64,000 nucleotides of DNA from Hyaloraphidium curvatum SAG 235-1. Its lineage: Eukaryota > Fungi > Monoblepharomycota. The position numbers were made by a program, and so were the translations under genes. The notes under the pieces are model-generated. The model had not been told where the DNA came from, searched no databases, and saw nothing but the letters and a program-made list of their open reading frames with translations. The stretch is from assembly GCA_025558095.1 (NCBI GenBank), contig JAIVFI010000037.1, positions 124,001 to 188,000 on the forward strand, given 5' to 3'. This document shows, piece by piece, positions 41,007 to 45,602 of the stretch; position 1 is the stretch's first letter, and the number at the start of each line of letters is the position of its first letter.

Positions 41007-43488
41007 TCACGCTGTGTCCTTCCTCTGCAGCGTCGGCACCGTGACCGTCATCTCTGGAGGCACCAGCAGCCCCGGCGACTCGGGTCCCGCGGCGCCGACC
41101 ACCGACTCGGTGCCGCCGCTCTGCACCCGGTCCAGGTTCCCGCTCGGCGCCCTCTCGAGGTTCCCGCTCGGCGTCCTGTCCACGCCCGACATCGACGGCC
41201 TCCTCGGCGACCCGTACGTCACGCCAACCTCGATCCCGTTCACCCGGAGGATGCTCCCCCTCCTCCCCCTGAGGTCCCCGCTCGCGGCGCGCAGCACCTC
41301 GGCCCCGTTCTCGGCCGCGAACTGCTCCCCCGTGATCCCCATGGTGTCCGCGACCAGCTGCGCCTCCCTCGCGCGCATCAGATCCGCGTCCATGCTCCGC
41401 CGGTCGATCCGCTCCCGCTCCGTCAGCGGCGGCGGCGCGACCTTCTCCGTGCCGGTCGGAGACTTGGACACCCCCTCGGCCTCGGCCCGCAGCCGGGCCA
41501 GCGCGGCCTCGCCGGGGATCTGGAGGTGCAGGAAGCGGAAGGCGGCGTCGGTGGAGCGCACGATGAAATCGTGCATGCGCCGCTTGAACGTGCCCGGCGC
41601 GCCGATGTCCATCGAGCCCGCGACGTATTCGCCAAAGTCCTCCAGATGTTCGCGGCCGTAGACCGACCGCTCGAGCTCCTGCCGCACGTGGTACCGCTTG
41701 TAAGTGTAGTACGCCATCAGCCAGAGGTTGGCGATCAGCAGCAGTCCCATGAGGATGCCGCACAAAAGCCACAACCACGGGAAACTGCCCTGGGGAAGCT
41801 GCACGAGGATGGCGATGTTGAACAGGGCCCAGAAGGGCAGGACGGTGCGGCGGCAGAAAAAGTCGAGCTCGGTGGCGAGGATGTGGTTGCCCTCGCGCTT
41901 GACGAGGTGGTGGATGATGGCGACCTCGAGCAGCGAGAAGAAGGCCACGACGAAGGACACGAAGACGTACCTGGAGCGGGATCAGCGGTGAGCGTTCACA
42001 CAGTCGGCGGCAACCCACCAGTCGATCGTAGTCGCGTAGTTGACGAGCGGCAGCCCCGCAGTCACCGAGCTATAGAACGATACTACATCCCCCGCACATC
42101 AGCCTCACCACCAAGATACACCACACAGGAACCCACCGATGGTGAGCACGAGCGTGATGCTCAGACCAAGCCGCTCCGGCACGGCCTCGACGCTCAGCCA
42201 GTAGCTGACGGCGGTCAGCGCGACCAGGAGGAGGAGGGGGAGGAACGACTTGATGTAACTGCGCGGAAAGAGGAGTCAGGAGAGATCGGCGGCGCAATAA
42301 GCGCGAGACACGCACTAGCTGCCCGACTTGCGGCTGATGTACATCTGGAACTTGAGCAGGTCGTACGCCGGCTGCCCCTGCCGCGAGTAATACTTTTCCC
42401 TGCTCGCCTGGTAGGTCTGGTAGTCCCACGTGACCTGCGAGAAGGTCTCGGGGTTGATGGGCGGGTACACCGTCTCGGGCTGCCAGAACACGGCCATCTG
42501 GTTCTCGTTGTACGAGTACGAGGTGAGCTGCATCTCCAGGACCTGACGGTCGAAGGGGAATGCTCCGAGGTAGAAGGAGTTGGTGAGCTGCACGACAAAG
42601 TGCCGGGACCAGAAGACGTCCCCGGTGTAGGGGGTGAGCTTGATAACCTCGTCCAGCGTCACGGGGTCGACTTCGTTGGCAAAGTAGATGTCGGGCGTCC
42701 ATATGGCGCTGCATGGTGATGGTCAAACGCGTGCCGGCCGCAAGACGGGTCGGTACCCACTGAGTGGGGCCCCATCCGCCGCCGAGGGCGACAGATCCCA
42801 TGATGCGGTAGTCGGATCCGTTGGGCGAGGGAAAGTCATCCGGGGAGACGATGAGCCGGGGGTCGTTCCAGTACAGGCGGAGGAAGACGTCGATGGTGAA
42901 GGTCGAGGTCACGGGGTCCACGTCGTAGAGGTTGTTCACGCGGAACTGTTGCCGCCGGAACGGCCGGGAACGATGCGGAAAAATGCGCGGGGCAGGGCGA
43001 AGGGCGCGGAGGAGGCCGGTCAGCCGATCCGCGTTCGCAGGAAAAGCCGGTCGGCCTGGCGGAGCGCGCAGGGACGCACCTGAGCACGAACAGGGGTGGC
43101 ACCCTGGCCGAATCCGGGCCGAGTGCCTGCGAGGACGAGCAAAAGAAATGAGCCCCGAGGCCGGCCGGGGTCCGCCGGGCCACGCACCGGCGTCGTACGG
43201 GGTGTCTTCTCCGGCCACGGCACTTTGGAGCACCTTTGTGGCATTCTCGAACGCGAAACCCGGGTACAGCCGCGGCAGCAGGTGCCTGCGATCGAACTGG
43301 TGCAGCTGCGGGGCCACGGCGTGCGGCGACGGCTCGTCCCGCATGGGTGGCCGCGGACCGCCGTTGGCCCACGAGCCCCGGCGGCCCAGGAACCGTGGGC
43401 GGCCCGGAGCGGCGAGCGCCGTCGGCGCAAACAGTGCGAAGAGGAGGAGCGCGGTGCACGCGCGCACGGCGAGGTTCGGCGGCCGCAT
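41007..43488 (-). CDS. Pentameric ligand-gated ion channel subunit A (Cys-less Pro-loop type), 7 exons
   Basis: Signal peptide; YD..RP, VDPVTSTFTIDVFLRLYWNDPRL, IWTPDIYFAN, FPFDRQ, M1 YIKSFLPLLLLVALTAVSYWL, M2 PERLGLSITLVLTIVSF, LPLVNYATTIDWY, M4 LDFFCRRTVLP. Confidence 0.93.
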
Positions 43489-43695
43489 GGTCGGAGCCGT
43501 TGCTCGGGGAACGAGGTCGGTTTGTCGGTCGGCCCAGCCCCGCCCAGGGTCCGGCGGGGCGGGCCGCCTTTGCATCAAAACCCGCACCGCCGGGGGCACG
43601 CGGATCGGGGCTTACGCCGGCGCTTCCCGCCGGCCGCGGCCGCACGACGAGCCTGCGTTGAGCCGGACGCGGCCGAGGCGTCGTCGGGCCGCAGA
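43489..43695. promoter_or_regulatory. Putative bidirectional promoter between the two pLGIC genes
   Basis: 207 bp between divergent ATGs at 43488 (-) and 43696 (+). Confidence 0.5.
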
Positions 43696-45602
43696 ATGCC
43701 CCCCACGCTGACCGCACGTCCGCCGGGCGGCACCCGCCCAACCGCAGCCGGAAAACGACCAGCCCGCCCGGCAGCATGGACTGCCCTCCTTGCATTTGCC
43801 ATCTCCATTGTGCTCTGGATTTTCCCTGGCCCGACCGCCGCCGCCGTCGAGGGCTGGTCGCTCACCAACGCGACCAAGGTCATCTTGAACTCCCTTCTCG
43901 ACGCGGGATACGACGCCGCGTCCAGGCCGGGCTTCGGCAGCGGTGCGCCCACCCCAGTTTATGCCCAGCTGCAGATCATATCGCTGTACGAGGTCGATCC
44001 GCTCTCGTCGACGTTCACCGTGGACGTCGAGCTAACCCTGCGATGGAACGACCCGCGCCTGGTCTTCAACTACGACGACTACCCTGTGCCCGAGGGCTCG
44101 GACCTGCGTTTAATCGGGTACACCGAACTCGGCAGCGGGATTGGACCCACGCACATAATATGGACGCCCGACGTCTACTGGGAGAACGAGGTCGATCCCG
44201 TGATTTTGAACCAGGTCATCAAATTAGCACCGGGCACCGGCGACCTGACGTGGACGCGGCACTACCTGGTGCAACTGACGTCGGTATTTAGCTTCCAGTC
44301 CTTCCCCTTCGATTTGCAGGTCGGTGGACGCACGTCGTATCGCGCAGCGTCGCTGACCTCCCCCCCCCCCCCCCCCCCTCGCAAGGACCTGCGCCTCATG
44401 CTCACCCCCTACTCCTACAACTCGCTCCAGATGTCCCTTTACTGGAGCGAACCCCCGATCGCCCCCGAGCCCGCCTCCTTCAACCACGCTACGTTCGACT
44501 ACAGATCGTACAAGGTCGCGCGCGAGCTCTTCATTTCGCGAGAGGGCCAGCCCACCTACGACCGCCTCATCATCGACGTGGCCGTAACGCGCCGGAGCGA
44601 CGGGTACATCATCAAGGCCAACCTGCCCCTCATCCTGCTCGTCGCGCTGTCGGCCGTAAGCTACTGGCTCAGCGTCGAGGCCGTCCCCGAGCGCCTCGGC
44701 CTCGTCGGTGCGTGTCCCGTGCCGCACGCGCAACCGCATGCACGCCTGACCGTCCCCTCCGCATCCAGTCACCCTCGTCCTAACCGTCGTCTCGTTCTAC
44801 TCCACCGTCACCGCCGGGCTCCCCGCCGTCAACTACCCGACGACGATGGACCTGTACGTGTTCGCCTGCTTCTTCGTGACCTTCATGGCGCTCGTGGAGG
44901 TGGCCGCGGTGCACCACCTCGTGGTGCGGAGGAACGACGTGGTCATGGCGACGGAGCTAGACTACTACTGCCGGAGGGTCGTGCTCCCCGTGTGGGCCAT
45001 CTTGTGGGTCTCCCCTTCCGGTCTGCCGGTTGTTGAATGCGTGCTGATGCGGCCCCCCGCGCAGCAACCTGATCCTGATCCAGAACGGCGGCCAGGCCCT
45101 CGGCATCTGCATCGGCGTCGCCATCTTCGTCATCATCATCTGGAACGCGTGGATCTTCTACTACCGCGTGCGCAAGCGGAAGCAGCGCGCCTTTGAGGCT
45201 ACCGCCGACGGCGACGAGCGCCTCGAGAGGAAGGCGTACAAGCGCGAGCTGGGCAAGCTGGTGCGTTGGACCGACAAGCTGTACAAGTTCCTGCACATCC
45301 GGCCGCCCGTGAGCGACGAGCAGGCCGCGAAAGAGCACATGGAGGAGCTGGAGCGGATGGCCGAGGCGGAGAGGCTGTGGCTGGAGGAGCAGCGCGAGGC
45401 CGAGGCGGCCGAGGCGGCGGCGATGGCCAGGGCCGGGTCGCCGAGCTCGGCCAAGAGGGCGGGGAGCTCCAGGGCCGGGTCGCCGACCGACGCCAAGAGG
45501 AGGGGGAGCTCGAGGGCGGAGTCGCCCGCGGACGTGAACAGGGAGGGGAGCGGGAACGGGAGCTCGTTGGGTACCGCAGTCGAGGACTCGGGGTCGCGGT
45601 GA
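43696..45602 (+). CDS. Pentameric ligand-gated ion channel subunit B (Cys-less Pro-loop type), 4 exons
   Basis: YDAASRP, VDPLSSTFTVDVELTLRWNDPRL, IWTPDVYWEN, FPFDLQ, YIIKANLPLILLVALSAVSYWL, PERLGLV|VTLVLTVVSF, LPAVNYPTTMDLY, LDYYCRRVVLP. Confidence 0.93.

What the first reader, a model, noticed from the sequence alone, without database searches (positions are those of the whole stretch)
41007..45602. Head-to-head pair of Cys-less pentameric ligand-gated ion channel genes in a fungal-like genome
Seen: two intron-containing paralogs with ATGs 207 bp apart, both carrying the full pLGIC signature (W.DPRL, WTPD, FPFD.Q, M1 Pro, M2 9' Leu and 6' Thr, LP..Y.T..D), with no Cys flanking the Pro-loop. 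Both have P-E-R at M2 positions -2'/-1'/0'. Known: pLGICs occur in animals, some prokaryotes (ELIC, GLIC) and protists, and are generally regarded as absent from fungi; -1' Glu marks cation channels, while -2' Pro (PAR) is typical of anion channels. Inference: co-transcribed subunits of a heteropentameric, probably cation-selective chemosensory channel with an unknown ligand. Spliceosomal introns and flanking host genes argue against bacterial contamination.
Basis: partly seen in the sequence, partly recalled or inferred. Interest (0 to 1): 0.92.

Follow-up and report, generated by a model that had tools for sequence, protein, structure and literature searches.

The report
Paired nerve-receptor-type channels in a fungus
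An aquatic single-celled fungus carries two spliced, back-to-back genes for the five-subunit ligand-opened ion channels best known as animal neurotransmitter receptors, a family reported absent from fungi; each has an extra membrane helix, and the same two-gene unit recurs in related organisms, which suggests the two proteins work as one channel.

Summary
Confirmed. The window is Hyaloraphidium curvatum (Monoblepharomycota). [quoted passage not shown] One RNA run splices 7 of their 9 introns. Closest solved structures are glycine receptors. A 2016 survey found no fungal pLGIC; here the family turns up in nine close H. curvatum paralogs and in six chytrid genera, all machine-annotated in GenBank. 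No paper on them was found. New points: (1) A and B belong to two old subtypes, and all four A-type genes found lie head-to-head with a B1-type gene (twice here, twice in environmental samples). (2) Both have a fifth hydrophobic helix after M4 and a cytoplasmic tail, shared with the chytrid proteins. (3) Their pore motif P-E-R replaces the P-A-R of their closest kin; that one change makes the glycine receptor cation-selective. Best reading: a co-regulated A/B heteropentameric, cation-preferring chemosensor. Assembly, selectivity and ligand are inferred, not shown. The scan noted pLGICs elsewhere in this genome before.

The parts
43696..45602 (+). Gene A, A-type Cys-less pLGIC subunit, 572 aa; exons 43696-44319, 44386-44707, 44769-45003, 45065-45602
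   Evidence: all 3 introns spliced in RNA contigs
41007..43488 (-). Gene B, B1-type Cys-less pLGIC subunit, 691 aa; exons 43488-43188, 43126-43080, 42945-42761, 42708-42316, 42258-42137, 42082-42019, 41970-41007
   Evidence: introns 3-6 spliced in RNA; introns 1-2 agree with GenBank model KAI9005000.1 but are not covered by the RNA contigs
43489..43695 (.). 207-bp spacer between the two start codons, probable bidirectional promoter plus 5' UTRs
   Evidence: A transcript contig begins at 43638; no sequence conserved with the other pairs' spacers
43696..43842 (+). A: N-terminus with hydrophobic stretch at aa 25-43, probable signal peptide
   Evidence: hydropathy only
43882..44595 (+). A: extracellular ligand-binding domain (spans intron 1), Cys-less Pro loop with Pro204
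   Evidence: Pfam PF02931; alignment to a GlyR-like sequence
44686..44694 (+). A: P-E-R pore motif, M2 -2'/-1'/0' (aa 309-311)
42170..42178 (-). B: P-E-R pore motif, M2 -2'/-1'/0' (aa 336-338)
45099..45155 (+). A: fifth hydrophobic helix (aa 406-424) after M4, followed by a basic stretch and a tail of about 145 aa
   Evidence: hydropathy; matching helix in the AlphaFold model of a paralog
41713..41769 (-). B: fifth hydrophobic helix (aa 439-457) after M4, followed by a helical then low-complexity tail of about 230 aa
   Evidence: single-sequence model of B exon 7 shows three successive helices

Best explanation
A and B are functional subunits of a eukaryotic Cys-less pLGIC in the plasma membrane of H. 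curvatum. SHOWN: intact genes, splicing in RNA, pLGIC domains and fold (model of a paralog), two old subtypes, and the A/B1 head-to-head unit kept in four places. INFERRED: (i) the shared spacer co-regulates them and the two proteins assemble into one heteropentamer (about 0.6); (ii) a small extracellular solute binds between subunits. B supplies the GlyR-like loop D Phe/Arg plus a loop G Arg, and both carry a loop C Arg and aromatic loops A/B/C, which points to a carboxylate-bearing ligand such as an amino or organic acid (about 0.4); (iii) binding opens the Leu9' gate and the ring of -1' Glu makes the pore cation-preferring, depolarising the cell and perhaps admitting Ca2+ (about 0.7); (iv) a fifth helix after M4 returns the C-terminus to the cytoplasm, so the tail takes the place of the long M3-M4 loop of animal receptors as the regulatory part (topology about 0.85, role unknown). 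The host is non-flagellated, so sensing of nutrients or neighbours is more likely than steering of zoospores.
For: Gene models and Pfam. RNA joints for 3/3 A introns and 4/6 B introns in one run. Best PDB matches are glycine receptors by sequence (E 5.6e-33) and by structure (Foldseek E 3e-27, rmsd 2.5 A). Tree: P-E-R clade 100/100, A-type 100/99, B-types 95/98, B1 partners 91/73 and 82/74 with a fourth member. A/B1 pairs: window; contig C6 (204 bp spacer); metagenome contig L023 (467 bp); L020 joined to L106 by an exact 24-nt end overlap that gives an open 807-aa B1 reading (210 bp). Intron positions are shared across organisms within each subtype. Subtype-fixed differences lie at GlyR-equivalent positions 63, 101, 127/129, 158, 209 and M2 4'. 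GlyR A-1'E alone gives PCl/PNa 0.34 (PMC2233820). The -1' acid is kept even where -2' Pro is lost (T-D-R in the C6 A-type). H. curvatum is non-flagellated (PMC8371127).
Against: No functional data. B-type/B-type head-to-head pairs exist as well (contig C1, 70-74% identical; L015, 69%), so inverted local duplication produces this order by itself. B2-type genes occur with no A-type neighbour (C39, L014), so some B-like subunits may work without an adjacent A. Both A and B keep plausible principal-face aromatics and could form homomers. RNA comes from one bulk run, as contigs only, which cannot show expression in the same cells or relative levels. Jaiteh 2016 warns that the M2 motif does not reliably predict selectivity in protist sequences. 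The spacer shows no conserved motif. The four pairs are not fully independent: two are paralogs in one genome and two come from related, unidentified organisms.
Confidence: 0.5

Rival explanations
1. A and B form separate homopentameric channels (or mix freely with other paralogs); they stay together because an ancient inverted duplication left them sharing a promoter.
For: Independent B/B head-to-head pairs and a tandem pair show that local duplication is common in this family. Both subunits have complete pore linings and aromatic loops A, B, C.
Against: All 4 A-type genes with upstream sequence face a B1-type gene and all 4 B1 genes face an A-type; the link survived duplication of the whole unit and divergence to 43-51% identity between partners in H. 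curvatum. Subtype-fixed residues sit at interface positions.
Confidence: 0.3
2. The channel passes anions or is poorly selective, like its P-A-R relatives; or it is gated by pH or lipids and not by an organic ligand.
For: Closest kin (chytrid and unnamed eukaryote proteins) have P-A-R; -2' Pro is retained; best structural matches are anion channels. Even GlyR A-1'E is only about 3:1 for cations. The motif is an unreliable predictor outside animals.
Against: An acidic -1' residue is invariant in all 14 members of the clade in the alignment; the same substitution reverses GlyR selectivity.
Confidence: 0.2
3. Contamination or recent transfer from bacteria.
For: Cys-less Pro loop and short M3-M4 loop resemble prokaryotic channels; an earlier scan note reports a separate bacterial-type copy elsewhere in this genome (not tested here).
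Against: Nine spliceosomal introns, seven spliced in RNA; 531-kb host contig with fungal neighbours (SWEET transporter); GC3 0.89-0.91 against 0.78-0.93 in neighbours; the clade groups with chytrid and other eukaryotic proteins (99/96), away from the short prokaryote-like sequences; a pattern scan of prokaryotic genomes with the Blyttiomyces protein found no close relative (a search for close kin only).
Confidence: 0.02

Closest known systems
Glycine receptor alpha / GABA-A receptors (anionic-type Cys-loop pLGICs)
   Same: Best sequence and structure matches in the PDB (about 25% identity, rmsd about 2.5 A over about 350 columns); same ECD and M1-M4 fold; M1 Pro, T6', L9', M2-M3 Pro; loop D Phe/Arg in B
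   Different: No Cys-loop disulfide; -1' Glu in place of Ala; M3-M4 loop only a few residues; extra helix after M4 and cytoplasmic C-terminal tail; longer loop C with an Arg
Eukaryotic Cys-less Pro-loop receptors of protists and invertebrates (Jaiteh et al. 2016, PMC4795631)
   Same: Cys-less Pro loop, eukaryotic genes with signal peptide, patchy distribution, unknown biology
   Different: That survey found none in Fungi and describes four transmembrane helices; my term searches of it found no mention of a fifth helix or of heteromers. Membership in its exact clade was not tested because its named sequences were not in my set
Chytrid Cys-less pLGICs (Blyttiomyces KAJ3331454.1, Globomyces KAI8896906.1, Boothiomyces KAJ3309495.1, Podochytrium KAJ3072204.1, Terramyces, Zopfochytrium; automatic GenBank annotation only)
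   Same: Nearest named relatives (about 30-37% identity); short M3-M4 loop and fifth helix; loop G and loop D basic residues
   Different: P-A-R or T-R pore motif (predicted anion type); no head-to-head partner in the one locus inspected (L021); they form their own clade and were not shown to be the sister of the P-E-R clade
Prokaryotic pLGICs ELIC and GLIC
   Same: Cys-less, short M3-M4 loop; acidic -1' residue and cation selectivity (own knowledge)
   Different: Not among the top PDB matches; homopentamers ending at M4; no introns

Membership tests
pLGIC / Pro-loop superfamily | Neur_chan_LBD beta-sandwich extracellular domain | tested here: met
   Pfam above cut-off for A exon 1 and B exon 4; paralog model and Foldseek
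pLGIC / Pro-loop superfamily | Invariant Pro-loop proline in aromatic-Pro-x-Asp | tested here: met
   A P204, B P229
pLGIC / Pro-loop superfamily | Transmembrane helices M1-M4 with M1 Pro, M2 9' Leu, M2-M3 Pro | tested here: met
   a fifth helix is additional
pLGIC / Pro-loop superfamily | Pentameric assembly and ligand-gated ion flux | not testable with these tools
   only monomer models can be made; no functional data
Cys-loop receptors (metazoan type) | Cys-x13-Cys disulfide loop | tested here: not met
   no Cys in either mature ECD; Cys-loop sequences form a separate clade
Anionic-type pLGIC | P-A-R motif at M2 -2' to 0' | tested here: not met
   P-E-R in both
Cationic-type (nAChR/5-HT3) pLGIC | G-E-K/R motif without -2' Pro; loop B Trp | tested here: not met
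   -1' Glu present but -2' Pro retained; loop B aromatic is Tyr
Eukaryotic Cys-less clade of Jaiteh 2016 | Groups with the named protist and invertebrate Cys-less sequences | tested here: inconclusive
   groups with chytrid and unnamed eukaryotic Cys-less proteins (99/96); the paper's named members were not in the tree
Obligate heteropentamer | Subunits need each other for a functional channel | not testable with these tools
   only indirect: conserved pairing and subtype-fixed interface residues

The most novel reading that the evidence does not exclude
Early-diverging fungi keep a five-helix branch of the pLGIC superfamily with a cytoplasmic C-terminus. In the Hyaloraphidium lineage it switched on its own from an anion to a cation pore through the single -1' Ala-to-Glu change, and split into two subunit types that form an obligate heteropentamer encoded by a conserved bidirectional gene pair. 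This would be a neuron-independent origin of a heteromeric excitatory receptor, in a culturable fungus.
Probability: 0.35. Interest if true: 0.88.

Novelty: new variant of a known kind. Interest (0 to 1): 0.74.

Why it matters
The standard survey states that fungi have no pLGICs and that no biological role is known for any pLGIC of a unicellular organism (PMC4795631). These genes and their chytrid relatives overturn the first statement and give a culturable host in which to test the second. A fifth transmembrane helix changes the topology thought fixed for the superfamily. The natural P-E-R versus P-A-R contrast between close fungal relatives is a ready test of the selectivity rule known from GlyR mutants. 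A conserved two-gene unit would show heteromeric assembly arising outside animals.

Tried and rejected
Contamination and recent bacterial transfer: rejected (introns, RNA, GC3, tree). Reading A's first intron as coding (it is in frame, 66 nt): rejected, RNA skips it. GenBank's 359-aa model of B, which reads into intron 5 and stops: rejected, RNA splices that intron. Search for a conserved element in the spacers of six head-to-head pairs: nothing. Metagenome pattern scan: only distant relatives (not modelled further). Cymes and Grosman 2016 could not be fetched. ESM Atlas gave only generic pLGIC clusters. The upstream multi-pass membrane ORF is unrelated to the channels. Monophyly of all fungal copies is not shown: an unnamed eukaryote group falls with the chytrid clade (90/86), and no AU test was run. 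No Gonapodya protein appeared in three word-based searches, which is weak evidence of absence.
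Full report
OBSERVATION. Gene A runs on the + strand from ATG 43696 to the stop at 45602 in four exons and gives 572 aa; gene B runs on the - strand from ATG 43488 to 41007 in seven exons and gives 691 aa. Neither has an internal stop and all nine introns are GT-AG, 48-134 nt. The start codons have 207 bp between them. Exon-by-exon Pfam scans hit Neur_chan_LBD and Neur_chan_memb for both genes. 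The listed motifs are present, and neither mature extracellular domain contains a cysteine. A and B are 45-50% identical and share no intron position.

HOST AND EXPRESSION. The best database hit is gene B itself, GenBank KAI9005000.1 of Hyaloraphidium curvatum, a member of Fungi, Monoblepharomycota, described as non-flagellated (PMC8371127). That GenBank model reads into intron 5 and stops at 359 aa; no GenBank protein for A came up in three searches. Contigs of one public run skip all three A introns and B introns 3-6 at the predicted places, so both genes are transcribed and spliced in the same sample. B's first two exons are not covered. Contigs cannot give levels or show expression in the same cell. 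GC3 matches the neighbours, and the right-hand neighbour is a SWEET sugar transporter. Contamination is excluded.

FAMILY IN THE GENOME AND IN FUNGI. The genome holds nine close paralogs: head-to-head pairs on C37 (this window), C6 and C1, a tandem pair on C6 and a single gene on C39, plus a divergent copy on C4. Earlier scan notes mention further divergent copies, so this is a lower bound. A whole-library HMMER search and profile searches with name look-ups give the nearest named relatives as chytrids: Blyttiomyces, Boothiomyces, Terramyces, Globomyces, Zopfochytrium and Podochytrium. Jaiteh et al. 2016 state that they detect no pLGICs in Fungi (PMC4795631). My searches found no later paper that reports them. 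So the family is visible in public automatic annotation but, as far as this library shows, undescribed.

A CONSERVED TWO-GENE UNIT. Trees place the window's genes in one fully supported clade (100/100) with two branches: A-type (100/99) and B-type (95/98). Within B, the genes that face an A-type gene form their own subgroup B1, with moderate support (91/73; 82/74 with four members). Every A-type gene for which upstream DNA is available lies head-to-head with a B1 gene: this window (207 bp), C6 (204 bp), an ENA metagenome contig of 54% GC (L023, 467 bp), and Logan sample SRR26194948, where contigs L020 and L106 share an exact 24-nt end overlap and join into an open B1 reading frame 210 bp from the A start (this join is my inference). 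Intron positions are shared within subtypes across these organisms: A introns 2 and 3 in L023, introns 1 and 2 in L020, and B intron 1 in L023 and L106. The C6 B1 gene groups with the environmental B1 genes (98/98), so the unit was probably duplicated before these lineages split. Residues fixed between subtypes fall at binding-interface positions: A-types have Glu at GlyR-equivalent 101 (loop A), Pro at 158 (loop B) and Arg at 209 (loop C); B1 has Phe63, Phe127 and Ser129 (loops D, E) (GlyR numbering from my own knowledge, mapped through a GlyR-like hit). This is the pattern expected of complementary subunits, but it is indirect. Against over-reading it: B/B head-to-head pairs (C1, L015) show that inverted duplication makes this order without any A, and the spacers share no motif.

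FIFTH HELIX. After M3 there is a very short loop, then M4 with the usual Asp-x3-Arg...Pro entry, then a further hydrophobic helix followed by basic residues and a long tail. The AlphaFold model of paralog P0003 (55% identical to B) shows M1-M4 and a helix at 416-468 with pLDDT 87-94 over 421-450; a single-sequence model of B's last exon shows the same three helices at lower confidence. A crude hydropathy count after the M2-M3 loop gives three segments in 13 of 14 members of the clade, most chytrid proteins and many unnamed eukaryotic kin, against at most two in the prokaryote-like set and in all but one Cys-loop sequence. These five-helix proteins group together at 99/96 under a mixture model. 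The C-terminus is therefore predicted to be cytoplasmic, unlike in known pLGICs. Packing of the helix could not be inspected.

MECHANISM. The closest solved structures are glycine and GABA-A receptors. Their pore motif P-A-R is also that of most chytrid and other close relatives, while the whole clade studied here has an acid at -1' (P-E-R in 13, T-D-R in one). By parsimony the acid is derived. In GlyR the single change A-1'E gives PCl/PNa 0.34 (PMC2233820), so a moderately cation-preferring pore is the best guess; Jaiteh et al. caution that the motif is unreliable in protists. B has Arg at the GlyR-equivalent positions 44 and 65, A lacks both (Gln93, Thr114), and both have an Arg in loop C. 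From what is known of GlyR and GluCl, these suggest a ligand with a carboxylate bound at an interface whose complementary face is B; other A-types do carry some of these arginines, so this is weak. Proposed working: ligand binds at A/B interfaces, the Leu9' gate opens, cations enter, and the tails couple to the cell interior. Only the genes, their splicing, the fold and the pairing are shown; the rest is inference.

LIMITS OF METHOD. As the operators required, database and family searches used exon or open-frame references only (the homologue search used window:43696-45033, residues 60-337, which includes the in-frame first intron). The joined A and B proteins were not sent to any search or folding tool; that step was left out, and the full-length structure shown is that of a paralog. 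Joined models were built from window coordinates inside scripts for local alignments and trees.

VERDICT. Real, expressed and correctly identified. It is a new variant of a known superfamily: fungal, Cys-less, five-helix, with a derived acidic filter and a conserved A/B gene pair. Interest 0.74.

Noticed in passing
L014:6975-11983 (Logan SRR23967301): An intronless B2-type pLGIC lies about 1.3 kb from a divergently oriented ionotropic-glutamate-receptor-like gene (PF00060 E 7.5e-10), with one small ORF between them. Organism unidentified.
   Followed up: partly
G000:C4:610019-610366 and G000:C5:906925-907209: H. curvatum also has two Lig_chan (PF00060, iGluR-like) loci above the Pfam cut-off.
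   Followed up: no
G000:C4:70063-70707 (L016:3950-5086, minus): Divergent tenth pLGIC-like ORF, 21-24% identical to the others, G-G-R at the start of M2, no obvious signal peptide.
   Followed up: partly
window:41007-43488: GenBank model KAI9005000.1 of gene B is truncated at 359 aa by reading into intron 5; the GenBank models of two paralogs (P0008, P0010) match my models only up to a splice site and look mis-spliced in the same way.
   Followed up: partly
window:39128-40699 (minus): Intronless 523-aa multi-pass membrane ORF next to gene B with no Pfam match; unrelated to the channels.
   Followed up: partly
window:45929-46495 (plus): SWEET/MtN3 sugar transporter directly downstream of gene A (PF03083 E 9e-23).
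   Followed up: partly
G000:C6:863k (L011:5091-6688): The A-type paralog on C6 has T-D-R in place of P-E-R, the only member of the clade without the -2' Pro and -1' Glu.
   Followed up: partly
L104 and L105: An unnamed group of eukaryotic, intronless five-helix P-A-R pLGICs (neighbours LSM, La, COX17) is as close to the fungal proteins as the chytrids are; the hosts were not identified.
   Followed up: partly
L022:2-2044 (SRR26194948): Two B-type pLGIC genes in tandem in the sample that also holds an A/B1 pair and a B/B head-to-head pair, so that sample has at least six copies.
   Followed up: partly
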